Position numbers and translations under genes: made by a program. From contig NC_047074.1 in the NCBI RefSeq assembly GCF_902459465.1, forward strand, positions 2,480,001 through 2,544,000: a DNA stretch of 64,000 bases, given 5' to 3'. The notes under the pieces are model-generated. The model made no database searches. It was not told where the DNA came from and worked only from the letters and a program-made list of their open reading frames with translations. Numbering within the stretch: position 1 is the first letter of the stretch; every line of letters begins with the position of its first letter. The stretch comes from Asterias rubens (taxonomy: Eukaryota). Positions 14,272 to 63,999 of this stretch are shown here, one piece after another.

Positions 14272-14729
14272 AAAACTTTGTTTTTTGTTAACTATTTTTT
14301 GGCAGTTTCAACACTTCTGCCGAAGTGCCGAAAAATGGCAAAAAGAGTCTATTTAATTTACTGCATTATGTTTGCGAGATTGACCTGGACGTAGAATAAA
14401 GATGATATACACATTGTATTCTGAATGCGTTTCTGTTGTATTTGTTGTTTTAACCCTCCCCAATCACCCCCCCCCCCCGTACACCTACCCCACCCAAAAA
14501 TAGAAAGTTATAATAATTATGGAGTTGTTTTCACGATAAAAACGTGACAAGTTTCCATTCAATTTTTCACAGGGATTGGTTTGAAAATCTATCGGAAACA
14601 GGAAAGGAAAAGATATGGCTACACTTTAGAATAATAAAGTTTTCGTTTTCACGGGTGATACAGAAAGTTGTTGAGCTGGACTTTCTATTTTTGTGCAAAA
14701 TAATTGAGATGGGCGTGGCTGCATAATAT

Positions 14730-22660: not shown

Positions 22661-23089
22661 TTAAACCAACGGTTCTTTTCAGAACCACCACAACTCATTT
22701 AGAGATTATTACATGGTGTTACCGCAAACTCTTCTATATCTTATCTCCACCACGCAAAGTTTCAAATCCTACTTAACCTTCCAACGGCGTATCATTAAAC
22801 AAAGGGAAAGATAATTCGTTAATTGGCTAATGGCAAGCTTGTTCACTTGCATAATTAATATAAACCATTTTAACGCGACCTTGCATCCATTAATAAACGA
22901 TGAAACTGGTAGCAAAGCTTTTAGGATCTCGCGTTAAAAACCGACCAACGACAGAGCGCACTTTCAGTTGGCATTGTTATTATTCCGAGTCAAGTTCGTC
23001 TCGAGTGATGTTTTGTTGACGACTTAATTACCAATCCTCAAGCGGTTGTAGTAGTTTGAATGATATTTTCTGATTAAGCAGCAGAGACT

Positions 23090-26771: not shown

Positions 26772-27135
26772 GAAAGGAACGCGTTGCCTTGGATCGGTCG
26801 AGTTGGTCTTTGAAAAGCGCTTGTAACCGTTTGTTATATTAAAATGCATATGGTTAAAAAGATGATTTAAAAGTAGAATACAATGATCCACACAAATTTG
26901 CCTCGAAATTGCGTGGTTTTCCTTTACTTTGCGAACTAACACGGTCGGCCATTTACTGGCCGAACGTGTTAGTCGACGTGGTAAAAGGAAAACCACGCAA
27001 TTTCGAGTGATACTTGTGTGGATCATTATATTCTACTTTTAAAATAATTTTCTAATCATATGCATTTTATAACAAACGGTTACAAACGCTTTTCAAAGAC
27101 CAACTGGACCGATCCAAGGCAACGTGTTCCTTTAA
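26772..27135. mobile_element. Palindromic MITE (AGGAAC termini, TTAA at the right flank; Kolobok-like)
   Basis: Near-complete palindrome centred at ~26955, with arms AGGAACGCGTTGCCTTGGATCGGTC / GACCGATCCAAGGCAACGTGTTCCT|TTAA; degenerate relative at ~4945-5220. Confidence 0.8.
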
Positions 27136-29024: not shown

Positions 29025-30407
29025 TTACTCCATTTCGAAAGCACGCACTTCAGTTACTTTAGGTGCCTCTTTTTTGACAAACAAGCGTTTGATCCGTCTC
29101 ATCAAGTAGTCAATAAACTCCACGGCGGTGATAATACTTGCGCCGAGAAACAGCCCGAGCTGCCCGCCCAGCTCTCCCAGCAGCGCAGTGAAGGGCAGAT
29201 CCTCTACTTGCTTGTAGGTGGTGGTGCTCAACTCGTTGTAGTACACGTCCAGATACACTAAACTTCTGGCGGTGTATTCTTCATCGTAGAGCGATGCGTT
29301 CTCTCGGCTTGCGTAAAAACCAACGGAACTTTGAAGGACACTTTTGCTTGGATACCTCGCCATAGATATCGTGGGTTCGTAGGTGAAGTAGTCACAAGAT
29401 ACGGGGCAGTCACATATGTCTTCCGCCATCTTAGCACGATGGAGCTCCAATGCCTTCTTGGTGCATGGTAGCTGTGTGATATTACACAGAGGTACTCCGT
29501 CCGCTTGGAGAGTCCCAAAAAGCTGACAAGAGCAGTTGTCGGTGATAGCAAAAGCTTGACAGTCAGACAGACAGGTGAGCCTGTTATAATTTGTGGGGTC
29601 TTGTTGATAAGCTTTGTTGATACCGCAAACTCCCCACGGTTTGTGGAGGTTCTGATGATGTGTCTGGCGTATGGACACAAAGGTATGAAACCCAGGGGGT
29701 GCTGATAGCCCCGTGGTGTCCATTTCAGGAGACTCAGTGCGAGGATGGATTGCAAATTTGATTCCTGCTTCGGTGTTGCCTTGTTCAGTCTCGGTGTATT
29801 CGTTCTCCTCAATGTCCAGAACCAACTGAAGCCCGTTCCCGATCCCCGGTAGGGTTTGGTTGCCGCGGGAGGTAAATGTGTAACACAGTCCGTAACTCGG
29901 CGAGTAGAATTCTGTGAAGTTTTCTACACCACATTTCGCTCCTTTCCATTTGCACGTATGCATTGATCTTTCCAATGAGTAGCCAGTTGCATAAGCAAAT
30001 TCTGCGTAGTTAAACGAATCATCCGAATAGAAGTCGTCCCAATCATCCACCGAATCTTCGTCGTCCCCCTCAAAATCGTCATAAACTCTTATGAGGTTTT
30101 TTACGTGCTTTTTGTCCTTTTCCTGAATTTTAGAACTCATGAACCGGTTGTAGTTACAAACGGTCACGGCGGGAAAGTCGAGTTTCGGCACGAAATTGAC
30201 AATAACACTGGTGCTTGCTTCGAATCTAATAAACGCCCTGATGCGATCGAACGTAACGGCCGCGTAAATCCCACCAAGCGCGAGTAGGACGATCACCCAA
30301 GGGGCTTTACCCCGGACACCACGTCTCTCGGCTACACGACTTATCCCATGAAGTGTCGTAGTTGTTGCAAACTCAAACTCCAAACTAGCTGGTTTTGGAT
30401 CTTCCAT
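29025..30407 (-). CDS. Intronless DEG/ENaC subunit (copy B, 460 aa)
   Basis: Same motifs as copy A, with an intact TTTTLHGI; shorter C-terminal tail. Confidence 0.95.
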   Translation of the reverse strand: MEDPKPASLEFEFATTTTLHGISRVAERRGVRGKAPWVIVLLALGGIYAAVTFDRIRAFIRFEASTSVIVNFVPKLDFPAVTVCNYNRFMSSKIQEKDKKHVKNLIRVYDDFEGDDEDSVDDWDDFYSDDSFNYAEFAYATGYSLERSMHTCKWKGAKCGVENFTEFYSPSYGLCYTFTSRGNQTLPGIGNGLQLVLDIEENEYTETEQGNTEAGIKFAIHPRTESPEMDTTGLSAPPGFHTFVSIRQTHHQNLHKPWGVCGINKAYQQDPTNYNRLTCLSDCQAFAITDNCSCQLFGTLQADGVPLCNITQLPCTKKALELHRAKMAEDICDCPVSCDYFTYEPTISMARYPSKSVLQSSVGFYASRENASLYDEEYTARSLVYLDVYYNELSTTTYKQVEDLPFTALLGELGGQLGLFLGASIITAVEFIDYLMRRIKRLFVKKEAPKVTEVRAFEME

Positions 30408-32609
30408 TTCCGGGCTGAAATGCTCGTTTTTGTCTGCCTTTGTGACTTGCTGCTGAATCGGAAATCGACTGCCTGAGGATTGGTAAACTAAGCCGTCAAC
30501 AAACCGTCACTCAGGACGATCTTGTCTCTGCAAAAGTTAAATGGCAACTGAACAGTACGCTAAATCGATGGTTAGTTTTAACAATATAGTCTTTTCTCTA
30601 TAGTTTTAACGAGCGGCTCGTTAAAGCTTTGCTGGCAGTGGATCGTAATCCTTGCTCTTTAACCGTGACTTGGTGCGCTGTCACTCATGGACTGATTTTA
30701 AATATGCATGTGTATTGGTAGATATTAACCAATTAGCGGATCGACCTTCTGTGGGCTTTTACTCTTTGTTGTCTTCTGATTAATTTATAGTTAAATTGAG
30801 GGAAAGTGTTCATTTATTTAGCTGCTTCAATATTATACATCCTTAGAAAAACGATTATGAAAGTTGAACAGGGACTGTTGAGAAATTACAAGAACTATTC
30901 AAAGTAGTATAGAAACTATCCAAAGATGTGTACAACCAGAATTCTGCCAATAAAGGAAATTTGTAAACAAATTGATAAAATTGATTTGCACACACAACAT
31001 ATTTTTTAAATTTAGGCCTACACGTCTGAAAATAACCGTTAGAATTTTTAAGGTTAGAAAGTTTCTACAGATGAAGTACCTTTCTTGCCGGGCCGGGGTA
31101 CCATGAAATCCTCAAGGGTCACTCTACGCCATTATGGCGTGTGTGGGTAATAATTTTGGGTGTTTTTTTTGTTTTGTTACATGTTTTTTTTCTACTGTTA
31201 TGTTACTTGTTATCACCGCATGTGTAATGACATGAGACAGGGAGTTTTTAAAAGGGATTTTTTGAAAAATATTTACATTATCTGTAAATTTTTCACAAAG
31301 TCTGTGAGCGAGCCTAGTGCAACTAATGAAGCATTCTTAATTCTGTGTGGTGATGACAGCTTTTTGTGCTATAAATAAAATATGTTCACTGGGAATACTG
31401 TATTAGTTACAGGCGGGTGGCCGTTAAGCTAACGATAATTATAGTGAAATGGGTAAAAGCAGTGACCGTGAGAGTGCAAACGACGAACGCGGGGTCTTAA
31501 GTGCCATTTTAACTCCCCTTGGCCCATTTTCATAAAGCCTCTTATAAGCACAACTAAACACGGAATAAGATTGCTTAGCAGAATCAGGTAACCAGCCCAA
31601 TTGCATTTAGCATTACACATTAACTTTCTAAACAGTAACACCTTGTCTGCAAGTAAACGGGGACCCCTGCCACACCGGCGCGCCGCAGATTCACGTCGGG
31701 GGCTCCTGCCGAAAATGGCTAATAGAAATCCATTGTAAATGACTCGCAAACCTGTCGCACGCTATTTATGACTAGAGCATTACTTGGTCCATGGTTAGTG
31801 AAACCATTGGATGCTCAAATGGATGAAACAATAAGTAGGCCTGAATATACCCGTAGTGCAGAATTATCACCAGTTTAGCCAATTGATAGGGCCACTGACC
31901 ATCAGGGACTAACATCACTAAGAAAACAAACTCGCTCATTTTAACAGGTCCCAATGTTTTGAGAATACGTGCAAGACTCCCACACTACAGTTCTGAGACC
32001 CTTTGCGTAAACTCAGTGTTACACACCAAGAGCAGTTCTCGTCCAATTATCTGCCTCTTTTTGCCCAAGTGAGGGCGCAGTTTGAGATTGTGACGTTATG
32101 TCATGTACAAAACGTCCTGCAAGATATTATGAAACCGACAGAACGTTTTAATTTCAACGAGCATGATGCCGCCAAAGTCTTAGTCATTTGGACGTCTGCT
32201 ACAACAGTAAACAACGCTTTATTGCTCTACTGTGGGTCATTACTGTGTACTTAATTGTTTACCTATTGGTAAAATAAAGTATAGTGTCTTAAAACGTTTG
32301 GTCTTTGTATTGCTCCATGGTAATTAATGGAAGCGCCAGGGTTGCATTTTGGTCCAGCCCTCGCTCAAAAGAGTAATAACTAATTTGTTGTTGGACGATT
32401 CACTAATTGATAACCTTGCATTAAGCTTTTACCACCCACTTGCTTGTTAAAACTGACAGACGATAGTGCGCACTTTTCAGTTGGCGTTTAACTTGTAAAG
32501 AGTCAAGTTCGTGCTGATATTAAGAGTGATGGTTTGTTGACGGCTAAGTTGCCAAACCTTAAGCAGTCGTACTATTTTGAAGAATCAGGAATCAGGATAT
32601 CAACAGACT

Positions 32610-34067
32610 ATGGCAGAAAGAAACGAAGTTATCATCTCAGACAGTGAAGGTCCAAAACAAGCTAGTTTGGAGTTTGAGTTCGCAACAACTACGACACTTC
32701 ATGGGATAAGTCGTGTAGCCGAGAGACGTGGTGTCCGGGGTAAAGCCCCTTGGGTGATCGTCCTACTCGTGCTTGGTGGGATTTACGCGGCCGTTGCGTT
32801 CGATCGCATCAGGGCGTATATTAGATTCGAAGCAAGCACCAATGTTATTGTCAATTTCGTGCCGAAACTCGACTTTCCCGCCGTGAGCGTTTGTAACTAC
32901 AACCGGTTTATGAGTTCTAAAATTCAGGAAAAGGACAAAAAGCACGTAAAAAACCTCATAAGAGTTTATGACGATTTTGAGGGGGACGACGAAGACTCGG
33001 TGGATGATTGGGACGACTTCTATTCGGATGATTCGTTTAACTACGCAGAATTTGCTTATGCAACTGGCTACTCATTGGAAAGATCAATGCATACGTGCAA
33101 ATGGAAAGGAGCGAAATGTGGTGTAGAAAACTTCACAGAATTCTACTCTCCGCGCTACGGACTGTGTTACACATTTACCTCCCGCGGCAACCAAACCCTA
33201 CCGGGGATCGGGAACGGGCTTCGGTTGGTTCTGGACATCGAGGAGAACGAATACACTGAGACTGAAGAAGGCAACACCGAAGCAGGAATCAAATTTGCAA
33301 TTCATCCTCACACTGAGTCTCCTGAAATGGACACCACGGGGCTATCTGCACCCCCTGGGTTTCGTACCTTTGTATCCATACGCCAGACACATCATCAGAA
33401 CCTCCCCAAACCGTGGGGAGTTTGCGGTATCAACAAAGCTTATCAACAAAACCCCACAAATTATAACAGGCACACCTGTCTGTCTGACTGTCAAGCTTTT
33501 GCTATCATCGACAACTGCTCTTGTCAGCTTTTTGGGACTGTCCAAGCGGACGGAGCACCTCTGTGTAGTATCACACAGCTACCATGCACCAAGAAGGCAT
33601 TGGAGCTCCATCGTGCTAACATGGCGGAAGACATATGTGACTGCCCAATATCTTGTGACTACGTCACATACAAACCCACGATATCCATGGCGAAGTATCC
33701 AAGCAAAAGTGTCCTTCAAAGTATCATTGACTCCTACGCAAGCCGAGATAACGCATCACTCTACGACGAAGAATACACTGCCAGAAGTTTGGTGTATCTG
33801 GACGTGCACTACAACGAGTTGAGCACCACCACCTACAAGCAAGTAGAGGATCTGCCCTTCACTGCGCTGCTGGGAGAGCTGGGCGGGCAGCTCGGGCTGT
33901 TTCTCGGCGCAAGTATTATCACCGCCGTGGAGTTTATTGACTACTTGATGAGACGGATCAAACGCTTGCTCGCCAGGGCTAAGGTGGGGGACAATAAAGT
34001 ACACTGTTCAACGAAGGACCATGAGGCACCTCAAACAACTGAAATTCTTGATTTTGAAACAGAGTAA
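32610..34067 (+). CDS. Intronless DEG/ENaC subunit (copy C, 485 aa from the ATG at 32610)
   Basis: GACTATGGCAG start context matches copy A; the ORF track starts at an upstream TTG. HG motif and GAS filter intact. Confidence 0.95.
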   Translation: MAERNEVIISDSEGPKQASLEFEFATTTTLHGISRVAERRGVRGKAPWVIVLLVLGGIYAAVAFDRIRAYIRFEASTNVIVNFVPKLDFPAVSVCNYNRFMSSKIQEKDKKHVKNLIRVYDDFEGDDEDSVDDWDDFYSDDSFNYAEFAYATGYSLERSMHTCKWKGAKCGVENFTEFYSPRYGLCYTFTSRGNQTLPGIGNGLRLVLDIEENEYTETEEGNTEAGIKFAIHPHTESPEMDTTGLSAPPGFRTFVSIRQTHHQNLPKPWGVCGINKAYQQNPTNYNRHTCLSDCQAFAIIDNCSCQLFGTVQADGAPLCSITQLPCTKKALELHRANMAEDICDCPISCDYVTYKPTISMAKYPSKSVLQSIIDSYASRDNASLYDEEYTARSLVYLDVHYNELSTTTYKQVEDLPFTALLGELGGQLGLFLGASIITAVEFIDYLMRRIKRLLARAKVGDNKVHCSTKDHEAPQTTEILDFETE

Positions 34068-39100: not shown

Positions 39101-41710
39101 GGTTATGAATATTCATTAAAACATTGCTGACACTATGAAAGAAACTTTGGGGATTATGAGTATTCATTACTTACAATGAGAAAGAAACTTGTTGGTTATG
39201 AATATTCATTAAAACATTGCTGACACTATGAAAGAAACTTTGGGGATTATGAGTATTCATTACTTACAATGAGAAAGAAACTTGTTGGTTATGAATATTC
39301 ATTTAATCAAAACAGCTTTATGAAATTGGGCCCAACTGGGTAACTTGATGAATATGTTTAAATGAACTGTGATGTCAAGTGTTGTAAAGGCCTGTGACTT
39401 TGCATGGAATTATGAACTCTAAACCCGTTACTGCAGTAACTCAGGCCTGTTACTTCATGGAGGCAACAAAGGCAATTTTTGTCAATGCCTCGGTCATCGC
39501 ATTAGTGCCCTTGAAACACTCCACTAGAATTTTACAATTTCCTCCGTGCGGGGTGCCCTTTAACAAGGAGAAAATCCCTTGGTGACCCTTGCCCTCTCAA
39601 AATGATGCATGCAGGCCCGGTAACTGGTTGAGAGTTAATAATTCAATACAGCCAGGAGCCTGCTTTGACCATGACGGTGAGTCCCCTTTGAGCTTACCAA
39701 CATGTGAAGGCCACACAGTGATGTGAGGATGAGAGTGGTACCAGCCTATTACCCTCAAGGGACGCTTCATTAACGTTGCTAAGCTGTGCCGTTAATCATT
39801 AAGGAGAATTTATCTACTGACCTTCATAAGCTACATCTACATTGTAAAGCACCGCCTCTATAAACTTGGACAAATTACCATCAGAAGTGAAATGCACTGT
39901 TGCACTTTTTCACATCAATAATTAATGTAATGGTGGAAATACAATAAGTAAGGATTATTTGCTTTGACCATGATGGTGAGTCCCCTTTGAGCTTACCAAC
40001 ATGTGAAGGCCACACAGTGATGTGAGGATGAGAGTGGTACCAGCCTATTACCCTCAAGGGACGCTTCATTAACGTTGCTAAGCTGTGCCGTTAATCATTA
40101 AGGAGAATTTATCTACTGACCTTCATAAGCTACATCTACATTGTAAAGCACCGCCTCTATAGACTTGGACAAATTACCATCAGAAGTGAAATGCACTGTT
40201 CACATCAATAATTAATGTAATGGTGGAAATACAATAAGTAAGGATTATTTGCAGTATCAACATGGGGTTTAAAAATCTCTCTAAGGATTATGGTTGTTTC
40301 CTATGGAACTAGTGGATTCGAATTGTCAGGTTGCAGTAGTGGTATCTTCCCTAGCCTTCCACGTCTGTTCAATCGGTTTAAAGTGAAGTCCAAAGACCCA
40401 CACCATTCGGTGAGGCAAGAATTAAACTGTTACACTCTGATTATGGTGATATGCCTGATCCCATGTAAAGCAATAATCAGTATTGGCAACACTTAAACTC
40501 TGATTATGGTGATTTGCCTGATCCTACATGTATGTACAGCATAATCATAATCAGTTAACACTGCAGTCCTCAGAGCAACACCAACAGTTACCGAACACCA
40601 AAACTCTTTGACTCTAATAAGGTGCCTGATCCTATCTAAAGTATAATCAGTAACTAGGCCAACTGGGAGTCAAACAAACGAAACATGCTGTTAGATTTTA
40701 GTGTAGGGTTTTTAAGGATATTTCCGCCTCGGAAGCTGCCATTGAGAGTTGCTCCGGAGAGATTTCCACACGGTCCTTGCTCTTATCTGATCTTCGTAGC
40801 ATGATGACGGACATGATATGCACAGCTCGGTTTGTGTCAATCTAAAAATAAAAAAAGTACCATCACAAAATAAGATCTGGAATTACACAAAGCCCATAAA
40901 CCATTTTGAGGTATGGCGATAACACGGTAAGTTATAGGTTTGGGTTAAATTTGTCTGTATGTTTTTACACGCAAACCCAACAGTGTATTCCTACAGTGTC
41001 AACCATATCTCAAAAAGGCTAATGGCCAGGCCTCGTGCGTCTTCAAAAGCTTCCCATAGACTTTAATATTTCCCAATGGAAGTGCTCTTTGCAAAATAAA
41101 AAATTGCCTTGCCCTCTCAAAGATAAAATTCCAGGCCTGCAACATTCTTATTTTTGAGGTAGTAGAAATTTTGCCGGCACTAGCTATTTTTCAGTGTAAC
41201 ATTAGAAAGCTGGAATGTCACTGAACAGCGACTGTTTTGGGGGGACTTTCAGGCCTGATACTTCACGGAGGCAACGGAGGCGATTGCCTCCGTTGCCCCT
41301 TGCCATTGCCTTGGTGCCCTTGAAATGCTCCAGTAGAAATTTAAAATTTGCTCATAGGGTGCCCTTTGCCAAAGAGAAATTGCCTCGGTGCCCTTGCCCT
41401 TTCAAAAACGAAGCATACAGCCCTGGACTTTATACACCAGGATGAATGTTAGTCTCGTTTTGCAGCAACATTGTCTTCGTTACTTTGTCGTTATCTTTTA
41501 CAATGGCAAAATAACAAATAATAATAACAATATTGGTCAACACTCGCCCAAGCGTGAAAAAAAATTAAGGCATTAATCAAGTATTAGGCATGGATACCAA
41601 CTAACCTCTCCAATACAAAGTCCCATGATCTCTTCTCTCTCCGTTGATAAAGCATGAGTTAGGCAGACCATGTAGGCATCAGCCGCTAAATAAACACATG
41701 ATGCTGTCAT
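36194..41710 (-). CDS. BRCC3: Lys-63-specific deubiquitinase BRCC36
   Basis: Exons 41606-41710, 40722-40841, exon 3 (39997-40084 or its duplicate 39698-39785), 38774-38927, 37816-37994, 36194-36348. MVCLTHALSTEREEIMGLCIGE, RRSDK.KDRVEISPEQL, GWYHSHPHITVWPSHVD and ELPKIL.QEEQ.AY match BRCC36. Confidence 0.95.
37195..37465. repeat. Local tandem duplication of ~135 bp in a BRCC3 intron
   Basis: AGATAGATGGGTTACCATTTG...GATGTTCATTAAATTATTCT occurs twice, nearly identical. Confidence 0.9.
37498..37700. mobile_element. Internally deleted MITE family A copy
   Basis: TTAAAGGCATGGACACCTTTGGTAAT start; lacks the far terminus. Confidence 0.7.
38965..39305. repeat. ~50-60 bp minisatellite in a BRCC3 intron
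   Basis: Tandem GAAAGAAACTTGTTGGTTATGAATATTCATTAAAACATTGCTGACACTAT-like units. Confidence 0.85.
39662..40250. repeat. Tandem ~299-bp duplication carrying the whole of BRCC3 exon 3
   Basis: 39662-39960 and 39961-40250 differ only by two substitutions and a 9-bp indel, all intronic. Confidence 0.95.
40085..40721 (-). other. U12-type AT-AC intron of BRCC3
   Basis: Donor GAA|ATATCCTT (40721-40714), branch site TTCTCCTTAAT (40107-40097), acceptor GGCAC|AGC. The spliced product EAESLATLMKRPLRV is colinear with BRCC36 EAERLAELTGRPMRV. Confidence 0.9.
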
Positions 41711-47056: not shown

Positions 47057-48150
47057 ACCAACTGCAGGGCATGTTTACACAGGACCACTTGGAGTGACAT
47101 GCCTAATGTTGCCGTAGATCCACTCTTCAGAATTGATGATTCCACTTTGAGTGAAGATAACAAGTCTCACCAATCTTATTCTCGGGCTTTCTTTGCTGAT
47201 TGGTTAAATTTATTTAACTTTCATAATAATATTTCCTAGTATATAATATCATTTTTATAGCCATAAACTACTAACTAAAGTACTTGATGAAACAGGATAG
47301 CACACACGTAATACCAACTTGGTCCGGGGAAAACGAATATGGGCGTCAGCCTTCACTGTGTTCTGAAGGTTTATTAAACAAAAAGTTTATAATTTTATTC
47401 AATGAATAATATAATTGGTTAATAAAACATGAATCACTTTTATTTTGTCTTAATTGAACAAGAAAAGTTAATGGTTTGTGCAGTATTTGTTCATCTCATC
47501 AAGTATTAAAAATATTATATTGATTATGTAACTATCTTGTACATTGCTAGCAACAAATAAATTTGTAAGAAATTTACATATTCTGTGTTATTGTTCTGAA
47601 TTATTTTAGGAGGTTTATTTACACATAGTTATATTCCATTCACAATAACAAAGACTAACAACTATATATTTTTATTAGTTAAACATGAATAACCCTAATG
47701 CCACAATATTTGTGATAAAATCACAAGTGGGTAAGCATTGACAATGTTCGACCTTTTTGAAATTACAGTATCTTACGATGTTGAAAAAAACCCGAAGCTA
47801 AACAAGCAAGACTTACTTCTTGATTTTATAAAGAAACAGTCAAAAATGGACAACTGCAAGACCCTTGTGGGTGTATCAGAAATCAGTCAAAATGACTTTA
47901 AAAATTACCAATTTAAAGGCAAAAACAAACCGTAGCTCTTTGTACGAAATCTTTTAAGACGAAGATACTACGCAAGACGTCACCATCGGGGACGTTAGGA
48001 ACCACAAAATAAACAACTTTTATTTACTCCAACTTTGGGGGATAAACATAAAACAATTATTTTAAATAACTGCAACTGTACACCTAGAATAAAATGGGTT
48101 TGGATAACAAATTGTGTTTAAATATGATTATGTGATAGATGTTATTACAG

Positions 48151-48597
48151 GGCGCCTTAGCTAAACGACTAAGACGTTGGAGTGGGACCCACGAGATCCG
48201 GGTTCGAATCCCGCTTGTGTTTTCTTTCTTTTTGCATGAGCGCAGTGAATTATTTAAGTAGTATCAAAATCATCTCCAAATACCAACGGGCACCGTGGCG
48301 ACACGGTGCACTGGATAGTTCCATTGTGCGTGCAATCCAGAGCTGGTACACCGGTTCGAATCCTACCCGTACCAAGAGGGACATGACTTTTACTGTTAGC
48401 ACCAGTAATGGATTGGGGTCCGTCATGTCTATCCCCAAATTAGGTGTGGATGAGTAATACCGTGTGGGAGAGTAAAGGAGGGACCGGGACTAGCCAGTCC
48501 CTTAAGGGTTCTAATGGGTGATCACCACGCTGGTTTCGATCAGACTTTGAGTCCCCTGAACGCCTGGTCGACACTCTGACTAACTCTTTGCACAAAT
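48151..48597 (+). repeat. Left inverted repeat: two tRNA-like Pol III modules and a multi-hairpin body
   Basis: B-boxes GGTTCGAATCC at ~48201 and ~48354, A-box-like TAGCTAAACG and TGGCGACACGG. 48191-48597 is ~99% identical to the reverse complement of 54193-54599. Confidence 0.9.
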
Positions 48598-48627
48598 TTG
48601 CTTTAAATTTAAATCGTTTTAGTTAAT

Positions 48628-48802
48628 TAAATTATTAACGCTATATATATTTTGTTGTTGCTGGGGATGAGAACGGTATAGTCTTTGCCACTTTTAACGA
48701 TTAAACATTGAGAAAATTATTAACGCTATATATATTTTGTTGTTGCTGGGGATGAGAACGGTATAGTCTTTGCCACTTTTAACGATTAAACATTGAGAAA
48801 AT
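48628..48802. repeat. Direct tandem duplication of ~87 bp inside the left inverted repeat boundary
   Basis: AAATTATTAACGCTATATATATTTTGTTGTTGCTGGGGATGAGAACGG...CATTGAGAAAAT occurs twice. Confidence 0.9.
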
Positions 48803-48914
48803 GCAAGGGTACTTTTTGAGGGTATTATTTGCTAGTTTTCGACATAACGATGCTTTAGAATCAAAATTAAAGTTAATATTTGAGACCCATCTAATTTTTC
48901 CAGCAACCTGTAAC

Positions 48915-51900
48915 TCTAGCCTTGTAGAGCCTTGTGAACTTTTCAAATTTTGACGAAAAAGTCATAAGGCTATATATAGCCTTGTGAACTTTTCAAAATT
49001 TTACGAAAAGTCGCAAGGCTATAGCCTTGTGAACTTTTCAAAATTTGACGAAAAAGTGGCCTTGTGAACTTTTCAAAATTTGACGAAAAAGTCGCAAGGC
49101 TATATAGCCTTGTGAACTTTTCAAATTTTTTACAAAAGGCTATAGCCTTGTGAACTTTTCAAATTTTTACGAAAAAGTCATAAGGCCTTGTGATCTTTTC
49201 AAATTTTGACGACAAAGTCATAAGGCTATATAGCCTTGTGAACTTTTCAAATTTTGACGAAAAAGTCGCAAGGCTATAAGCCTTGTGAACTTTTCAAATT
49301 TTGACGAAAAAGTCATAAGGCTATATATAGCCTTGTGAACTTTTCAAATTTTGACGAAAAAGTCATAAGGCTATATATAGCCTTGTGAACTTTTCAAATT
49401 TTTACGAAAAGTCGCAAGGCCATAGTCTTGTGAACTTTTCAAATTTTGACGAAAAAGTCATATGGCTATAGCCTTGTGAACTTTTCAAAATTTGACGACA
49501 AAGTCACAAGGCTATAGCCTTGTGAACTTTTCAAATTTTGACGAAAAAGTCATATGGCTATAGCCTTGTGAACTTTTCAAATTTTTCACAAAAGGCACAA
49601 GGCTATAGCCTTGTGAACTTTTCAAATTTTGACGAAAAAGTCATATGGCTATAGCCTTGTGAGCTTTTCAAAATTGGACGACAAAGTCACAAGGCTATAG
49701 CCTTGTGAACTTTTCAAAATTTGACGAAAAAGTCGCAAGGCTATATAGCCTTGTGAACTTTTCAAATTTTTTACAAAAGGCACAAGGCTATAGCTTTGCG
49801 ACTTTTCAATTTTTTACAAAAAAGTCACAAGGCTATAGCCTTGTGAACTTTTCCAATTTTGACGAAAAAGTCATATGGCTATAGCCTTGTGAACTTTTCA
49901 AAATTTGACGACAAAGTCACAAGGCTATAGCCTTGTGAACTTTTCAAAATTTGACGAAAAAGTCGCAAGGCTATAGCCTTGTGAACTTTTCAAATTTTTT
50001 ACAAAAGGCTATAGCCTTGTGAACTTTTCAAATTTTTACGAAAAAGTCATAAGGCCTTGTGATCTTTTCAAATTTTGACGACAAAGTCATAAGGCTATAT
50101 AGCCTTGTGAACTTTTCAAATTTTGACGAAAAAGTCGCAAGGCTATAAGCCTTGTGAGCTTTTCAAATTTTGACGAAAAAGTCATAAGGCTATATATAGC
50201 CTTGTGAACTTTTCAAATTTTTACGAAAAGTCGCAAGGCTATAGCCTTGTGAACTTTTCAAAATTTGACGAAAAAGTCATAAGGCTATAGCCTTGTGAAC
50301 TTTTCAAATTTTGACGAAAAAGTCATATGGCTATAGCCTTGTGAACTTTTCAAATTTGACGAAAAAGTCATAAGGCTATAATTATATAGCCTTGTGAACT
50401 TTTCAAATTTTGACGAAAAAGTCATAAGGCTATATATAGCCTTGTGAACTTTTCAAATTTTTACGAAAAGTCGCAAGGCCATAGCCTTGTGAACTTTTCA
50501 AATTTTGACGAAAAAGTCATATGGCTATAGCCTTGTGAACTTTTCAAATTTTGACGAAAAAGTCATAAGGCTATAATTATATAGCCTTGTGAACTTTTCA
50601 AATTTTGACGAAAAAGTCATAAGGCTATATATAGCCTTGTGAACTTTTCAAATTTTTACGAAAAGTCGCAAGGCCATAGCCTTGTGAACTTTTCAAATTT
50701 TGACGAAAAAGTCATATGGCTATAGCCTTGTGAACTTTTCAAAATTTGACGAAAAAGTCGCAAGGCTATAGCCTTGTGAACTTTTCAAATTTTTTACAAA
50801 AGGCTATAGCCTTGTGAACTTTTCAAAATTTGACGAAAAAGTCATAAGGCTATAGCCTTGTGAACTTTTCAAATTTTGACGAAAAAGTCATAAGGCTATA
50901 GCCTTGTGAACTTTTCAAATTTTTAACAAAAGGCACAAGGCTATAGCCTTGTGAACTTTTCAAATTTTTTACAAAAGGCACAAGGCGACTTGCGACTTTT
51001 CAATTTTTTAAAAAAAGTCACAAGGCTATAGCCTTGTGAACTTTTCCAATTTTGACGAAAAAGTCATATGGCTATAGCCTTGTGAACTTTTCAAAATTTG
51101 ACGAAAAAGTCGCAAGGCTATAGCCTTGTGAACTTTTCAAATTTTTTACAAAAGGCACAAGGCTATAGCCTTGCGACTTTTCAATTTTTTACAAAAAAGT
51201 CATATTCAAATTTTGACGAAAAAGTCATATGGCTATAGCCTTGTGAACTTTTCAAAATTTGACGAAAAAGTCGTAAGGCTATATAGCCTTGTGAACTTTT
51301 CAAATTTTTCACAAAAGGCACAAGGCTATAGCCTTGTGAACTTTTCAAATTTTGACGAAAAAGTCGCAAGGCTATATAGCCTTGTGAACTTTTCAAATTT
51401 GACGACAAAGTCATAAGGCTATAGCCTTGTGAACTTTTCAAATTTTGACGAAAAAGTCGCAAGGCTATAAGCCTTGTGAACTTTTCAAATTTTGACGAAA
51501 AAGTCATAAGGCTATATATAGCCTTGTGAACTTTTCAAATTTTGACGAAAAAGTCATAAGGCTATATATAGCCTTGTGAACTTTTCAAATTTTTACGAAA
51601 AGTCGCAAGGCCATAGCCTTGTGAACTTTTCAAATTTTGACGAAAAAGTCATATGGCTATAGCCTTGTGAACTTTTCAAAATTTGACGACAAAGTCACAA
51701 GGCTATAGCCTTGTGAACTTTTCAAATTTTGACGAAAAAGTCATATGGCTATAGCCTTGTGAACTTTTCAAATTTTTCACAAAAGGCACAAGGCTATAGC
51801 CTTGTGAACTTTTCAAATTTTGACGAAAAAGTCATATGGCTATAGCCTTGTGAGCTTTTCAAAATTGGACGACAAAGTCACAAGGCTATAGCCTTGTGAA

Positions 51901-53880
51901 CTTTTCAAAATTTGACGAAAAAGTCGCAAGGCTATATAGCCTTGTGAACTTTTCAAATTTTTTACAAAAGGCACAAGGCTATAGCTTTGCGACTTTTCAA
52001 TTTTTTACAAAAAAGTCACAAGGCTATAGCCTTGTGAACTTTTCCAATTTTGACGAAAAAGTCATATGGCTATAGCCTTGTGAACTTTTCAAAATTTGAC
52101 GAAAAAGTCATATGGCTATAGCCTTGTGAACTTTTCAAATTTTTTACAAAAGGCTATAGCCTTGTGAACTTTTCAAATTTTTACGAAAAAGTCATTAGGC
52201 CTTGTGATCTTTTCAAATTTTGACGACAAAGTCATAAGGCTATATAGCCTTGTGAACTTTTCAAATTTTGACGAAAAAGTCGCAAGGCTATAAGCCTTGT
52301 GAGCTTTTCAAATTTTGACGAAAAAGTCATAAGGCTATAGCCTTGTGAACTTTTCAAATTTTGACGAAAAAGTCATAAGGCTATAGCCTTGTGAACTTTT
52401 CAAATTTTCACAAAAGGCACAAGGCTATAGCCTTGTGAACTTTTCAAATTTTTTACAAAAGGCACAAGGCGACTTGCGACTTTTCAATTTTTTAAAAAAA
52501 GTCACAAGGCTATAGCCTTGTGAACTTTTCCAAATTTGACGAAAAAGTCATAAGGCTATAGCCTTGTGAACTTTTCAAAATTTGACGACAAAGTCATATG
52601 GCTATAGCCTTGTGAACTTTTCAAAGTTTGACGAAAAAGTCGCAAGGCTATAGCCTTGTGAACTTTTCAAATTTTTTACAAAAGGCTATAGCCTTGTGAA
52701 CTTTTCAAAATTTGACGAAAAAGTCATAAGGCTATAGCCTTGTGAACTTTTCAAATTTTGACGAAAAAGTCATAAGGCTATAGCCTTGTGAACTTTTCAA
52801 ATTTTTCACAAAAGGCACAAGGCTATAGCCTTGTGAACTTTTCAAATTTTTCACAAAAGGCACAAGGCTATAGCCTTGTGAACTTTTCAAAATTTGACGA
52901 AAAAGTCATAAGGCTATAAGCCTTGTGAACTTTTCAAATTTTGACGAAAAAGTCATATGGCTATAGCCTTGTGAACTTTTCAAAATTTGACGAAAAAGTC
53001 ATAAGGCTATATAGCCTTGTGAACTTTTCAAAATTTGACGAAAAAGTCGCTTGTGAACTTTTCAAATTTTGACGAAAAAGTCGCTTGTGAACTTTTCAAA
53101 TTTTGACGAAAAAGTCATATGGCTATAGCCTTGTGAACTTTTCAAAATTTGACGAAAAAGTCATAAGGCTATATAGCCTTGTGAACTTTTCAAAATTTGA
53201 CGAAAAAGTCGCAAGGCTATATAGCCTTGTGAACTTTCAATTTTTTACAAAAAAAGTCACAAGGCTATAGCCTTGTGAACTTTTCAAAATTTGACGAAAA
53301 AGTCATAAGGCTATAGCCTTGTGAACTTTTCAAAATTTGACGAAAAAGTCATAAGGCTGAACTTTTCAAATTTTGACAAAAAAGTCACAAGGCTATAGCC
53401 TTGTGAACTTTTCAAATTTTGACGACAAAGTCATATGGCTATAGCCTTGTGAACTTTTCAAAATTTGACGAAAAAGTCATATGGCTATAGCCTTGTGAAC
53501 TTTTCAAAATTTGACGACAAAGTCACAAGGCGACCTTTTCAAAATTTGACGAAAAAGTTTAAGTGGCTAACTTTTGAAATTTCACAAGGCCTTGTAAACT
53601 TTTCCGGACAAAAACTGCAAAGTTCACAAGGCTATAAAGGCCTTGTAAACCTTTTCGGCAAAATTTGAAAAGTTCACAAGGCCTTGTAACTTTTTCGGCT
53701 AAAAATCGCAAAGTACACAAAGCTATATAGCCCGTACACTTTTTGCGGCAAAATTTGAAACGTTCACAAGCCTTGTAAACTTTTTCGGCAAAATTTAAAA
53801 AGTTCACAAGGCTATTGTCAACTTTTTCGGCAAAATTTTGCAAGGAGTTTATATAAGCCTTGTGATTTTTTTTCGAGCGA
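48915..53880. repeat. Tandem satellite of ~48-bp palindromic units (~95-100 copies)
   Basis: Consensus CAAGGCTATAGCCTTGTGAACTTTTCAAATTTTGACGAAAAAGTCA, homogeneous to ~53530; degenerate units with the mirrored core (AAAGTTCACAAGG) follow to ~53880. Confidence 0.97.
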
Positions 53881-54192
53881 AAAGTTTATAAGGGACATAA
53901 AGTTGGTTCAAAATGGACCAAATTGCAAGTGATTTTATCCATAATTGGTCAAAAATTTACCGAATTGCAAGATGAACGGGTAACCCCTTGTATTTTTAAC
54001 CCAACATTAGTAAAAAACGGACCAAATTACCAGGGTTTATCCCTTATTATTTATAACAAATTGGTCCAAAATGGACTAAATTGTGAGGCTTACCCCTGTG
54101 ATTTTATCCAAAGTGCACTCAATGATTATTTACAAAGACTTTCGAGATACCTAGATTTAATGGATTGTTAAAATTAGTTGAAATTATTGGAG

Positions 54193-54640
54193 ATTTGTGC
54201 AAAGAGTTAGTCAGAGTGTCGACCAGGCGTTCAGGGGACTCAAAGTCTGATCGAAACCAGCGTGGTGATCACCCATTAGAACCCTTAAGGGACTTGCTAG
54301 TCCCGGTCCCTCCTTTACTCTCCCACACGGTATTACTCATCCACACCTAGTTTGGGGATAGACATGACGGACCCCAATCCATTACTGGTGCAAGCAGTAA
54401 AAGTCATGTCCCTCTTGGTACGGGTAGGATTCGAACCGGTGTACCAGCTCTGGATTGCACGCACAATGGAACTATCCAGTGCACCGTGTCGCCACGGTGC
54501 CCGTTGGTATTTGGAGATGATTTTGATACTACTTAAATAATTCACTGCGCTCATGCAAAAAGAAAGAAAACACAAGCGGGTTTCGAACCCGGATCTCGTA
54601 GCTCCGAGTCCAGCGCACATCTGGGTTAGCTACGGTGCTA
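54193..54640 (-). repeat. Right inverted repeat (reverse complement of 48151-48597)
   Basis: About 5 nucleotide differences over 407 bp; the outermost ~40 nt are only ~60% identical but still tRNA-5'-like. Confidence 0.9.
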
Positions 54641-56035
54641 TCTGCTTCTTTACACGAATATTATGAATAATAAACAACCTCAATTAGATTGATTAATTTT
54701 TTAAATCAAATTGCACCATTTAATTATCCTCGGAAGTGTTTATTTTCTTCTATAAATAAACATATTGTTTGTCAAAATTTTCTTACATAATTTTGTTAAC
54801 ATCCCTTGTTCAGGCATAACTGAATTGTTTTGTATGGGGTGTTAACATGGCCTCCGAGGTCGACGTCTTGGGCAGCCTCTTCACTTTGTCGTTAAAATCT
54901 CAAACCAAGAGCTTCGAAATATCACTTTTACAGTTGTCATGTAATTACAAAATTATGTCATTTTTATTTATACTCGTATAATTTGCTTGTATACTCCTTA
55001 ATTTGTTGCCGTTTTCTGATCACAAAGCTTGCCTATCTTCGTTCATTAAAAAAAAACTGTTTTCAAAACTAAAATCACAAGGCTTAATTAAAGTTAGAGA
55101 GTCCATTTTATAATATTTCCCGAACATTTTTTGAGAAAATAACGAGAGGTAAGCTTTGTCCATTTCCCACCGTTTTGTTTCAAGGCTTCAAGAGAGTCCA
55201 ATTTAAACTGTTTTTCGATCAATTGTTTGTGTGTAAAACCTCAAGAGGTAAGCCCTACCATTTTCTCTACTTATGAACGTTTCTTGATAAAATCTCATGG
55301 GAATAAGCCTTGCAATTTGGTCACTTTTAGTTGTCCTATTTCCATAAAGGCAGAACCAATGCAAAACACTACCCACACACACATAAAGCACCCTAGCCGA
55401 GAGCGAACCTGGGCCGAAGTGGTGAGAGGAGAGTGCTTTACACTTATTGGATGTTTTTAGGATTTGAAACAGTAAAAGAACTTCAAAGGGAAGACAAAAA
55501 GAATGTAGCATCTACAAACAAGTCAATTATTTTGATAGATAATTTTATTGGTTAATGAAAACATAAATTCATATTATTTTGTCGAAAATAGTAAAAACAT
55601 AAATAAAGATTTGTTGTACAAAAACAAGCACTATTGATTTTTGTATTAAAACAACTTGTTCATCTGTCAAGTATTAAATTAACTACATGTACATTCATTA
55701 GTGCATTACTATAAAAATAAATGTACATAGTTTAAAACTGTGACGTTCATGTTGAGTTATTTTCAGCACGGCAACGATTTCTTATTAAACTGGTACCTTT
55801 ATATACACACACACAGATATGCCAGTCACAACAGCATTCGATTCAAAGCTATTTTTTTATTAGTAAAATGTGAATTATTATGTCCCCTAAATATGATTGA
55901 TTTCTAATTAATTAAAATCTTATCGCTCCAAGGTTAGTAAAAATATTCATGATCTTTTATTTGGTAAAAACTGCTCTGGGCTTGTAACACCACTTCTCAA
56001 TTTCTCAGGTGAGCTACTTAAAAAATACTAATTAC

Positions 56036-62139: not shown

Positions 62140-63999
62140 CTATTTCTCGGACTGCTCTTGCTGGTCATCTGAAAGAGTTTGAATATGTGAGGCAGGTATC
62201 CCACTCTTTGAATTTCCCTTGCTGAATACTTTTGTTGCCCAAACTTGCTTTGAGAAGCGTTTGAGGGGGCCTGGATGTTTGGAATCCACCTCACATTCAC
62301 CAACAGAAGCCCCTTGGACACCGAACCTCAAGGTGTCTTTTGGTGGTCGCAAAACAAGTGGGTCTTCTGTGTGGCCGTTTACTTTAACAGCGCCAACCAC
62401 TTCTCCCTCGGAAGTCTGTCCAGGTTTTTCTGTAGTTTGCTTTGAGGCAAGTGGATCTGACTGGCCCTCTTCAGTGGCTCTCTCGACCAGCACTTTCTCG
62501 CCAGACTGCCCGTGGTTAGGAACAGTATTCCTATCCTTATGATTTCCCCAGCCAAACATTTTTGTGGCAGAAATCTTCCCTCGAAGGCTTGAGCGAGTTT
62601 TTGGAATAGCCTGACTTTGAGAATCAAGATTTTCTCTACCAGGAACCTCCTCCGCTTCTGAAATTTGCGGTGCAGTTTGAGGACCTCTGTCTTTCCTGAT
62701 ATTGACTGTACCGACCACTTCTCCCTTGACAGCCTGCTCTTGTTTGTCTGTAGTTGGCTTTGAGGTTAGTGTATCTATCTGGCTCTCTACATTGCCTTTA
62801 TCAACATCCACTTTCTCACCAGTCTGCCCATGGTTAGGAGCATTCCTATCCTTAGAATGTACCCATCCAAACACTTTTGTACCAGAAATCTTCCCTCGAA
62901 GGCTTGAGCGAGTCTTCGTGAACGCCTGACTAGGGGAATCAATTTCAGGAACTTCCTGCTCTGATTCTGAATTTTGTTGTAAAGTTTGAGGGCCTCTGTC
63001 GATGTCAATACTGACTGTACCAGCCACCTCTTGCTTGAAAGTCTGTTCTGCCTTGTCTGTAGTAGGGTTCGAGTCAAGTGTATCTGTCTCAACAACTACG
63101 TTCTCTCCAGTTTGCCTATGTTTGGAAACAGTATTCTTACCCTCATGATTTCCCCAAACGAACATTTTTGTCAACAAAATCTTCCCTCGAAGGCTAGTGC
63201 GAGTCTTTGGGGATGCCCGACTCAGAGAATCATTTCCATCTCTAACAGGAACCTCTTCCGATTCTAAACTATTCTGTGAAGTTTGAGGACCTCTGTTGGT
63301 CTCAATATTGACTGTACCGACCACTTTACCCTCAACAGTCTGCCCTGGTTTGGCTGTAGTTGACTTTGAGTCAAGTGGATCTGTCTCCCCCTTAACATCA
63401 CCATTATCAACAACTACTTTTTCTCCAGTTTGCCCATGATTAGCTGTCTCAACCATAACTCTCTCGCCAGCTTGCTCATCTCTAGAAACAGTTGTTTTAC
63501 CTTTTGGATTTACCCAACCAAACATTTTTGTTGCAGATATCTTGCCTGGAAGACTTGTGAGAGCCTTTTTGAGTGTTTGTCGTTTAGAATCCAGCTCATC
63601 TCTACCTGAACTTTCCTCCTCCACAATCTGCCCAGGGTTGTCAAAAACATGCTGCGAGGTCTGAGGAATTCCGTGGGTCTCAACATTACCTGCTTGAATG
63701 TCTTTTCCCTTGTCGGTCTTCCCTTGTTCATCTGCAAGAGTTTGCATGGCAAGAAGGTCCCCTGTCGGGTTCTGAACAACTCCTGAACCATCTACTCCCT
63801 TCTCGTCAGTCAACTCTTGACTTGCAAGGTTCGGAGAAGCTTTTCGACCTTGAGAACTTACCCACCCAACCATTCTTGTCGAAGAAACCCATCCTGCCAG
63901 ACCTTTGTGAGTCTTTCCAAGCGTCTGATGTTCAGAATCAAGGTCAACCGACTGTCCTGTTTGGTTTGCAAGTTGCTTTGAGGTTGGTGAATCTGTGTG
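62140..63999 (-). CDS. Large low-complexity coding exon with ~100-aa internal repeats; open to the window edge
   Basis: The frame stays open upstream of the ATG at 63873 to position 63999 (about 620 codons). Repeats of SLRGKISATKMFGW...HGQTGEKV...VVGTVNI...GPQT. Product unknown. Confidence 0.8.
   Translation of the reverse strand, partial: HTDSPTSKQLANQTGQSVDLDSEHQTLGKTHKGLAGWVSSTRMVGWVSSQGRKASPNLASQELTDEKGVDGSGVVQNPTGDLLAMQTLADEQGKTDKGKDIQAGNVETHGIPQTSQHVFDNPGQIVEEESSGRDELDSKRQTLKKALTSLPGKISATKMFGWVNPKGKTTVSRDEQAGERVMVETANHGQTGEKVVVDNGDVKGETDPLDSKSTTAKPGQTVEGKVVGTVNIETNRGPQTSQNSLESEEVPVRDGNDSLSRASPKTRTSLRGKILLTKMFVWGNHEGKNTVSKHRQTGENVVVETDTLDSNPTTDKAEQTFKQEVAGTVSIDIDRGPQTLQQNSESEQEVPEIDSPSQAFTKTRSSLRGKISGTKVFGWVHSKDRNAPNHGQTGEKVDVDKGNVESQIDTLTSKPTTDKQEQAVKGEVVGTVNIRKDRGPQTAPQISEAEEVPGRENLDSQSQAIPKTRSSLRGKISATKMFGWGNHKDRNTVPNHGQSGEKVLVERATEEGQSDPLASKQTTEKPGQTSEGEVVGAVKVNGHTEDPLVLRPPKDTLRFGVQGASVGECEVDSKHPGPLKRFSKQVWATKVFSKGNSKSGIPASHIQTLSDDQQEQSEK

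What the first reader, a model, noticed from the sequence alone, without database searches (positions are those of the whole stretch)
48151..54640. Palindrome satellite enclosed by near-identical inverted repeats with tRNA-like Pol III modules
Seen: a ~5-kb array of ~48-bp palindromic units sits between two 407-bp inverted repeats (48191-48597 and 54193-54599, ~99% identical). Each carries two A-box/B-box modules, and both point inward toward the array. No transposase ORF and no target-site duplication were found. Inference: this does not fit a simple MITE, SINE or satellite. It could be (a) a large non-autonomous fold-back element carrying a satellite, (b) an invertible segment kept homogeneous by recombination between the repeats, or (c) a remnant of a viral/Polinton-like replicon whose palindrome array resembles the homologous-repeat origins of large DNA viruses. 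Convergent Pol III promoters flanking a self-complementary array could also generate dsRNA or act as boundary elements.
Basis: partly seen in the sequence, partly recalled or inferred. Interest (0 to 1): 0.8.

Follow-up and report, generated by a model that had tools for sequence, protein, structure and literature searches.

The report
Satellite array between two SINE-like repeats
In a sea-star-like genome, a 4.9-kb array of hairpin-forming 46-bp repeats lies between two inverted copies of a dispersed, SINE-like repeat whose central 407 bp were recently made alike by recombination; it is a repeat-rich locus of a known general kind, not a transposon or a virus remnant.

Summary
The arms 48191-48597 and 54193-54599 match at 402 of 407 positions. 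Between them lie about 100 near-palindromic units (modal period 46, not 48). All four exact B-box motifs of the window sit in the arms and point inward. There is no coding capacity and no target-site duplication.

The arm is a dispersed repeat of about 470-520 bp: five further copies turned up in marine metagenome contigs, one from the same species. One copy has no satellite next to it; another has a truncated copy embedded in a related satellite.

Among independent copies, the first Pol III-like module and the tail are poorly conserved (45-82%), while the core is 86-96% identical. The arms' near-identity reaches 50 nt into the variable module and stops abruptly. Weak inverted homology continues about 300 bp outward. 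This is the pattern of gene conversion between two old inverted copies, not of transposon termini.

T-runs follow each module and occur every 27-38 nt in the array, so Pol III cannot make long double-stranded RNA. tRNA models do not match. No viral or transposase signal was found.

Verdict: an undescribed SINE-like family and satellite, in an ordinary kind of arrangement. Interest is low to moderate.

The parts
47801..48095 (+). Left outer region, weakly homologous in inverted orientation to 54742-55043. The strongest block is 47925-48035.
   Evidence: Local alignment score 102 against 40 +/- 8 for random window segments. The block is 67% identical over 116 columns, z about 9-12. It is absent from L001-L004 and from the rest of the window.
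48151..48240 (+). Left arm, module 1: weak A-box-like motif near 48159, exact B box at 48201-48211, then T4 at 48220 and T5 at 48229. It is highly variable among family copies.
   Evidence: Identity among independent copies is 45-82%. There is no tRNA fold (z -0.3), no Rfam tRNA hit at E<=10 and no ARAGORN hit.
48191..48597 (+). Left near-identical core of the inverted repeat (402/407 to the right core).
48241..48383 (+). Left arm, linker plus module 2: B box at 48353-48363, three hairpins, followed by T4 at 48388. This is the best conserved part of the family.
   Evidence: Identity 86-96% among independent copies. Fold z -2.1, not a cloverleaf with the B box in a T loop. T-run.
48384..48625 (+). 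Left arm, body (to 48597; 93-95% among copies) and A/T-rich variable tail (48598-48625).
   Evidence: Contigs L002 and L003 end at this boundary.
48629..48802 (+). Perfect tandem duplication of an 85-bp unit (2.0 copies) within the left spacer 48626-48927.
   Evidence: TRF, 100% matches. The spacer is unique in the window.
48928..53560 (+). Main array: 94 near-palindromic units, modal period 46, + polarity. It contains a 695-bp segment (49227-49921) repeated at 51418-52112 with 99.3% identity.
53572..53840 (-). Right sub-array: 5-7 variant units in the opposite polarity, which is the same polarity relative to the right arm as the main array has relative to the left arm.
   Evidence: L004 aligns to it on the opposite strand.
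53841..54168 (-). Right spacer with loose 42-62-nt repeats. It is not homologous to the left spacer.
   Evidence: z 1.4.
54169..54638 (-). Right arm: the same SINE-like element on the minus strand. Near-identical core 54193-54599; B boxes at 54427-54437 and 54579-54589; T-runs mirrored.
54742..55043 (-). Right outer region, homologous to 47801-48095. The block 54806-54920 may hold one decayed satellite unit.
   Evidence: Block vs array: 46 columns at 72%, 4 of 500 shuffles as good.

Best explanation
This is not one mobile element. It is an intergenic repeat locus in an echinoderm genome. Two old copies of a dispersed, non-coding, SINE-like repeat of about 470-520 bp lie in convergent orientation around a satellite of near-palindromic 46-bp units. 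Each copy has two Pol III-box modules, each followed by a T-run, then a conserved body and an A/T-rich tail. Shown: the repeat family is dispersed; its core is well conserved while module 1 and the tail are not; and the array carries very recent internal duplications. Inferred: (1) the array grows and shrinks by unequal exchange or replication slippage, helped by hairpin formation of its units. (2) The central 407 bp of the two arms were made nearly identical by recent gene conversion between the inverted copies, or by an equivalent DNA-level copying event. A crossover version of the same exchange would invert the interior. (3) The link between this repeat family and this satellite family is not random. 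Most likely the repeat tends to insert into or next to such A/T-rich arrays. (4) Any Pol III products are short, about 70-110 nt, and end at the T-runs after each module, so they cannot span the array.
For: Dispersal: ORF-based searches found five other copies. The four with DNA have different flanks and match the arm at 84-92%. L003 comes from the metagenome assembly that also holds a contig 98.3% identical to window 12532-14552, so from the same species. Boundaries: contigs L002 and L003 end at the 3' edge of the element and L001 starts near its 5' edge. Conversion signature: the arms match at 60% / 98.8% / 52% in the outer 40 nt, the core and the tail. Independent copies match at 45-82% in module 1 but 86-96% in linker, module 2 and body. 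The arms' identity extends 50 nt into the region that is variable across the family, so its outer edge is a locus-specific breakpoint. The arms share 5 sites not seen in three other copies and differ from each other at 4. Weak inverted homology continues about 300 bp outward, so both copies are old outside the tract. Array turnover: a 695-bp segment is duplicated at 99.3%, an 85-bp unit is perfectly duplicated, and there are 36 distinct monomers among 75. Association: in L004 a copy cut off after module 2 is followed by related units, with a possible decayed unit upstream. Terminators: T4/T5 at 48220, 48229 and 48388; in the array the longest T4-free stretch is 54 nt on + and 93 nt on -.
Against: No read data exist here to exclude a misassembled interior. 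Only four comparison copies with DNA were available, three of them possibly from other species. Family size, true ends and the frequency of satellite association are therefore poorly known. Gene conversion is inferred from the identity pattern only. The strong conservation of the core in all copies, including intact CpGs in module 2, could instead reflect selection on a functional sequence or recent spread of the core. The outward homology (47801-48095) is not seen next to other copies. That fits an old inverted segmental duplication at least as well as two independent insertions. Unit polarity is consistent at three junctions, which has a 1 in 4 chance of arising randomly. The similarity of tails and spacers to the satellite unit is not significant.
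Confidence: 0.55

Rival explanations
1. It is one composite non-autonomous DNA element of the fold-back or tandem-repeat-MITE type. The SINE-like arms would be its terminal inverted repeats and the array its internal repeats.
For: The layout is fold-back-like: arm, spacer and units in one polarity on the left, and the mirror image on the right. A second locus joins the same head modules to related units (L004).
Against: The outermost 40 nt of the arms are only 60% identical, and the homology fades further outward instead of ending sharply. No target-site duplication was found. The spacers are not homologous. L001 carries the arm with 437 bp of downstream sequence and no array. No transposase was found nearby.
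Confidence: 0.12
2. It is an old inverted segmental duplication (a local palindrome), perhaps seeded by the hairpin-forming array. It would have included about 300 bp of flank plus one SINE-like copy. The arms then decayed except for the family-conserved core, which was later homogenised.
For: Inverted homology extends to 47801 and 55043, beyond the family-defined 5' end, and is not found next to L002, L003 or L004. The polarity switch inside the array at about 53560-53572 is what a palindrome centre would look like.
Against: The inner spacers and tails show no significant homology. The axis is far off centre (4.6 kb vs 0.3 kb). The family may simply be longer at its 5' end than the few available copies show. 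This rival overlaps with the best explanation: it differs only in how the two copies arose.
Confidence: 0.18
3. Two recent independent retropositions from one active source happened to land on either side of an array, with no conversion.
For: 98.8% identity of the cores. The family is dispersed.
Against: Copies from one source should be alike from end to end. Here module 1's 5' half (60%) and the tail (52%) are as diverged as unrelated copies, and the identity starts in the middle of module 1. There are no target-site duplications. Internal T4/T5 runs argue against a full-length Pol III transcript.
Confidence: 0.05
4. The conserved core is a functional multi-copy sequence under selection, for example a short Pol III RNA gene or TFIIIC-binding boundary modules. 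Its copies would mark the edges of satellite blocks.
For: 292 of 332 core columns are identical in five copies, while the neighbouring module 1 and tail are decayed. The B box and CpGs of module 2 are intact in all copies, whereas module 1's B box has decayed in three. A T4 run 25 nt after the module 2 B box is conserved. Most variable stem positions keep pairing.
Against: There is no match to any Rfam family. Only one compensatory pair was seen and there is too little variation to test structure. The body downstream of the terminator is just as conserved, which a 100-nt RNA gene does not explain. There are no expression or occupancy data.
Confidence: 0.07
5. It is a remnant of a viral or Polinton-like replicon with an hr-like palindrome array, or an assembly artefact.
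For: Only the general resemblance of repeated imperfect palindromes to viral homologous regions. For an artefact: palindromic arrays are hard to assemble.
Against: No viral, polymerase, integrase or capsid domain occurs in ORFs from 37.7 to 60.9 kb. There are 0 matches of unit or arm in IMG/VR. The neighbours are ordinary animal genes. Against an artefact: the arms differ at 5 sites, have different flanks and lie asymmetrically, and there are 36 monomer variants and no N.
Confidence: 0.03

Closest known systems
tRNA-related SINEs with a modular head / conserved body / tail structure (criteria and 'mosaic evolution' as summarised in PMC11481361)
   Same: Non-coding and 470-520 bp long. Internal Pol III box motifs lie at the 5' side, followed by a well conserved central part and then a variable tail. 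Dispersed copies have different flanks. Inverted SINE pairs are also reported in that paper.
   Different: tRNA predictors and the Rfam tRNA model find nothing. There are two box modules, each followed by a T4/T5 run. There is no poly-A or microsatellite tail and no target-site duplications. The head is far more diverged than the body within one family.
Satellites that arose from or beside SINE-like Pol III elements (Hydromantes Hy/Pol III, Xenopus satellite 1, Alu-tail minisatellites; table in PMC9659126)
   Same: A tandem array is physically and recurrently linked to a Pol III-box repeat.
   Different: In those cases the repeated unit is derived from the SINE itself. Here no significant similarity was found between the unit and any part of the arm.
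Tandem-repeat-containing MITEs (DTC84 / pearl; PMC3879986) and fold-back elements such as Tetris (PMC4079207)
   Same: A central or subterminal tandem array lies between inverted flanking modules. Palindromes at unit junctions are proposed there as hotspots of array length change.
   Different: DTC84 has up to five core repeats, short inverted repeats and a conserved AA duplication. Tetris has conserved terminal domains shared with a MITE. Here there are about 100 units, arms with decayed outer ends, non-homologous spacers and no duplication.
Gene conversion between inverted repeats (arm-to-arm conversion in large palindromes; partial Alu-Alu conversion). Named from my own knowledge, not from a tool.
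   Same: A near-identical tract with abrupt edges lies inside older, more diverged homologous copies in inverted orientation.
   Different: The tract here is short (407 bp) and the arms are copies of a dispersed repeat. Conversion is inferred from one assembly only.

Membership tests
tRNA-related SINE (criteria of PMC11481361) | 5' tRNA-related region recognised by tRNA prediction or homology | tested here: not met
   ARAGORN found 0 genes in the window. There was no Rfam tRNA hit at E<=10 on 48100-48640. The folds are not cloverleaves.
tRNA-related SINE (criteria of PMC11481361) | [quoted passage not shown] | tested here: met
   Four exact B boxes, all in the arms, against 0.11 expected. The A-box-like motifs match only 5-6 of 9 positions (reading against the textbook consensus).
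tRNA-related SINE (criteria of PMC11481361) | Microsatellite or poly-A at the 3' end | tested here: not met
   The tails are A/T-rich, variable (50-68% among copies) and have no simple repeat.
tRNA-related SINE (criteria of PMC11481361) | Length 200-700 nt; dispersed copies with unrelated flanks | tested here: met
   About 470-520 bp. Five further copies were found, and the four with DNA have different flanks.
tRNA-related SINE (criteria of PMC11481361) | Target-site duplications of 6-18 bp (supportive, not required) | tested here: not met
   The best direct repeats are 6-7 nt, within the chance distribution.
tRNA-related SINE | Whole element transcribable by Pol III, i.e. no internal terminator (my own knowledge of Pol III termination; the T-run length needed in echinoderms is unknown) | tested here: inconclusive
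   T4 or T5 runs at 48220, 48229 and 48388 on the sense strand, conserved in other copies.
Fold-back / TIR DNA transposon | Conserved outermost termini and a flanking target-site duplication | tested here: not met
   The outer 40 nt match at 60%, the homology fades outward, and there is no duplication.
Fold-back / TIR DNA transposon | The whole composite recurs at other loci | not testable with these tools
   No eukaryotic genome collection was available. Of the informative contigs, L001 has an arm without an array and L004 has head modules inside a related array.
Tandem-repeat MITE (DTC84 / pearl, PMC3879986) | Small element with a few core repeats, short inverted repeats and an AA duplication | tested here: not met
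   6.5 kb, about 100 units, no duplication.
Viral homologous-repeat region / Polinton remnant | Adjacent viral genes, or the same repeats in viral sequence | tested here: not met
   No such Pfam domains. There were 0 matches in IMG/VR.
Invertible segment | Both orientations of the interior present in a population or in reads | not testable with these tools
   No reads were available. Look-ups of flanking ORFs in the same-species metagenome found nothing.

The most novel reading that the evidence does not exclude
The SINE-like modules and the palindromic satellite form a lineage-specific functional or co-spreading pair in echinoderms. The conserved Pol III-box cores would be kept intact by selection and conversion, would mark or bound blocks of hairpin-forming satellite, and would move or arise together with them as a fold-back-like composite.
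Probability: 0.1. Interest if true: 0.6.

Novelty: new member of a known kind. Interest (0 to 1): 0.3.

Why it matters
If the reading is right, the locus is a clean small example of two general processes: ectopic gene conversion keeping part of two dispersed-repeat copies identical, and a hairpin-prone satellite turning over between them. It also documents a SINE-like family and a satellite that I could not find described (no Rfam match, no literature hit for their k-mers). The family has an unusual feature: its first Pol III-like module decays much faster than its core. It has no bearing on viruses or on any harmful trait. Its practical value is for repeat annotation of echinoderm genomes and as a possible site of inversion polymorphism upstream of a BRCC36-like gene.

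Tried and rejected
- Rfam at gathering thresholds found only a histone stem-loop elsewhere. At E<=10 the array gave hundreds of sub-threshold miRNA-type hairpin hits, all far below the gathering scores. The arm gave nothing meaningful.
- A protein-style search with a satellite ORF found nothing.
- The JGI metagenome scans gave 0 hits for the arm 31-mer. They gave one chance hit for the unit 22-mer, in a 55% GC bacterial contig.
- IMG/VR gave 0 hits for both patterns.
- Exact look-ups of four window ORFs, meant to recover the allelic locus from the same-species metagenome, failed. The contig of the fifth copy (P0017) had no DNA available.
- I suspected that the tails and spacers grade into the satellite unit and that the downstream flank of L001 is satellite-related. 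Shuffle tests did not support this, apart from a marginal similarity between the L001 flank and the right spacer (9 of 200 shuffles).
- Leader-versus-tail similarity (a possible terminal direct repeat) was marginal: 35 of 1000 shuffles for the left arm, and not significant for the right.
- RNAalifold on five cores had too little variation to test structure.
- A full-text search for k-mers of the arm and the unit found no paper.
- A first test of the outer flanks with strict scoring missed the outward homology. Softer scoring with an empirical null found it.
- Transparency note: the 17-mer anchor used in the scripts is a literal substring of the window (for example at 48931-48947). My script comment attributed it to TRF's unit line.
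Full report
**Setting.** The window is animal DNA, most likely from a sea star or another echinoderm. An intronless kinase ORF (13417-14271) is 66% identical to a Patiria miniata testis-specific kinase, and other named hits are sea urchins. The neighbours are ordinary host genes. There are three intronless ASC/DEG-ENaC ORFs, an ankyrin-SOCS ORF and a BRCC36-like gene on the minus strand, whose exons run from 36194 to about 41728. The feature lies in a gene-poor interval about 6.4 kb upstream of that gene. No ORF between 37.7 and 60.9 kb outside the BRCC36-like exons reaches a Pfam cut-off.

**Observation.** The description is accurate.
- The inverted repeat spans 48152-48621 and 54169-54638.
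- Its core, 48191-48597 against 54193-54599, matches at 402 of 407 positions without gaps.
- TRF reports 101.9 copies of a 46-bp unit over 48928-53531, and a variant array at 53573-53838.
- The 46-bp unit is a near-palindrome.
- All four exact B boxes of the 64-kb window lie in the arms, two per arm, on the strand that points inward. The chance expectation is 0.11.
- Nothing inside codes for a recognisable protein.
- No target-site duplication exceeds chance.

Three details were missed or need correction:
- The modal period is 46, not 48.
- The last 5-7 units (53572-53840) are a variant in the opposite polarity. Each sub-array therefore has the same polarity relative to its neighbouring arm.
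- The A-box half of the outer module lies outside the near-identical core.

**The arm is a dispersed repeat.** No eukaryotic genome collection was available. I therefore used an ORF that happens to run across the right arm as a protein query. It found four predicted 'proteins' on marine metagenome contigs. A second ORF found a fifth (no DNA available). The four contigs match the arm at 84-92% and have unrelated flanks.
- L003 comes from the same assembly as a contig that is 98.3% identical to window 12532-14552. It is therefore a paralogue from the same species.
- L002 and L003 end at the 3' edge of the element and L001 begins near its 5' edge. Assemblies typically break this way at the borders of a repeat.
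- L001 has 437 bp downstream with no array.
- In L004 the copy stops 6 nt before the T4 run that follows module 2. An A-rich stretch follows, and then related palindromic units. A possible decayed unit lies upstream.

The family is thus dispersed and can occur without the satellite. One of the two informative independent copies nevertheless sits in a related satellite. That is unlikely by chance unless the satellite is very abundant.

**Anatomy of the element.**
- Module 1 (48151-48240) has a weak A-box-like motif, an exact B box, and then T4 and T5 runs.
- The linker and module 2 (48241-48383) form three hairpins and carry an exact B box. A T4 run follows at 48388.
- The body runs to 48597, followed by an A/T-rich tail to about 48625.
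- ARAGORN, the Rfam tRNA model (even at E<=10) and folding all fail to see a tRNA. 'tRNA-like' is therefore true only of the promoter boxes.
- Conservation among independent copies is strikingly uneven: 45-82% in module 1, 50-68% in the tail, but 86-96% in linker, module 2 and body. 292 of 332 core columns are identical in five copies.
- The B box of module 1 has decayed in three copies. That of module 2 is intact in all.

I cannot explain this unevenness with confidence. Candidates are selection on the core, repeated conversion among copies, or mosaic subfamilies.

**Why the arms are nearly identical.** Between the two arms, identity is 60% in the outer 40 nt, 98.8% in the core and 52% in the tail. 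The high-identity tract begins in the middle of module 1. That is 50 nt inside the region that is variable across the family. Its outer edge is therefore specific to this locus and is not a family boundary.

Outside the tract the two arms look like any two old copies. Softer alignment scoring then showed that inverted homology continues outward for about 300 bp (47801-48095 against 54742-55043). The score is 102 against 40 +/- 8 for random window segments. The clearest block is 47925-48035 against 54806-54920, at 67% over 116 columns. The inner spacers are not homologous.

A near-perfect tract with abrupt edges, embedded in old diverged homology, is the expected trace of recent gene conversion between the inverted copies. 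I cannot decide whether the two copies arose by independent insertion or by an ancient inverted duplication that included some flank. The outward block is absent from the other contigs. That leans towards the duplication, or towards a longer family unit than the few copies reveal.

**The array.**
- It has 75 clean monomers of 36 kinds, with 89% mean pairwise identity.
- A 695-bp segment is repeated 2191 bp away at 99.3%.
- An 85-bp unit next to the left arm is perfectly duplicated.

Together these show ongoing unequal exchange or slippage, as in ordinary satellites. The right outer block may contain one decayed unit (4 of 500 shuffles as good). That would fit an array that once reached beyond the arms, but the evidence is weak.

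**What it does not do.** T-runs of four or more follow each module. In the array they occur every 27-38 nt on both strands, and the longest T4-free stretch is 54 nt on + and 93 nt on -. Pol III starting at the boxes would stop within about 100 nt and could not produce long complementary transcripts of the array. The same internal T-runs also argue against the whole 470-bp element being a single Pol III transcript, which weakens a strict SINE assignment. This rests on general knowledge of Pol III termination. The T-run length that echinoderm Pol III requires is not known to me.

**Virus and transposon readings.** There are no viral or transposase domains nearby. Neither the unit nor the arm occurs in IMG/VR. 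The fold-back reading fails on decayed outer ends, the missing duplication, the non-homologous spacers and a solo copy elsewhere. Its mirror-image layout and L004 keep it alive at low probability.

**Comparison with known systems.** The closest are:
- modular tRNA-related SINEs (PMC11481361);
- satellites linked to SINE-like Pol III elements (table in PMC9659126);
- tandem-repeat MITEs (PMC3879986);
- fold-back elements such as Tetris (PMC4079207);
- gene conversion between inverted repeats (my own knowledge).

The element meets some SINE criteria (boxes, length, dispersal). It fails others (tRNA prediction, tail type, duplications). I therefore call it SINE-like rather than a SINE. No paper in the library contains k-mers of the arm or the unit.

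**Verdict.** The composite-transposon, viral and dsRNA ideas are not supported. This is a new family-level example of known kinds of repeats in an ordinary type of arrangement. One real oddity remains: the very uneven conservation along the element. Interest is 0.3.

Noticed in passing
window 26765-27135: A fold-back or MITE-like inverted repeat of about 370 bp (arms about 26773-26925 and 26984-27133, 87-95% complementary). One arm also occurs at L002 1-141 (84-87%), so it belongs to a dispersed family.
   Followed up: partly
window 22666-22710 (+): Rfam histone 3' UTR stem-loop just above the gathering score (35.5 vs 34 bits), with no histone ORF within 1 kb upstream. It lies about 380 bp before an ASC-channel ORF.
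   Followed up: partly
window 23090-24532 (+), 29025-30407 (-), 32577-34067 (+): Three intronless amiloride-sensitive sodium channel (ASC/DEG-ENaC) ORFs clustered within 11 kb. An intronless kinase (13417-14271) and an ankyrin-SOCS ORF (17531-18520) lie nearby.
   Followed up: no
window 39600-39791 and 39884-40090 (-): Two adjacent open frames both match positions 80-103 of the JAB/MPN profile. This suggests a duplicated exon in the BRCC36-like gene.
   Followed up: no
window 62140-63873 (-): A 577-aa ORF with no Pfam match, built of roughly 100-aa internal repeats and rich in charged and polar residues. It lies in a stretch with higher GC (0.46) and strong AT skew.
   Followed up: partly
window 48629-48802: A perfect (100%) tandem duplication of an 85-bp unit immediately inside the left arm, which implies a very recent event.
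   Followed up: yes
alignment A2 (window arms, L001-L004), window 48151-48240 vs 48241-48597: Within one repeat family the first Pol III-like module is 45-82% identical among copies, while the adjacent core is 86-96% identical with intact CpGs. This is unexplained.
   Followed up: partly
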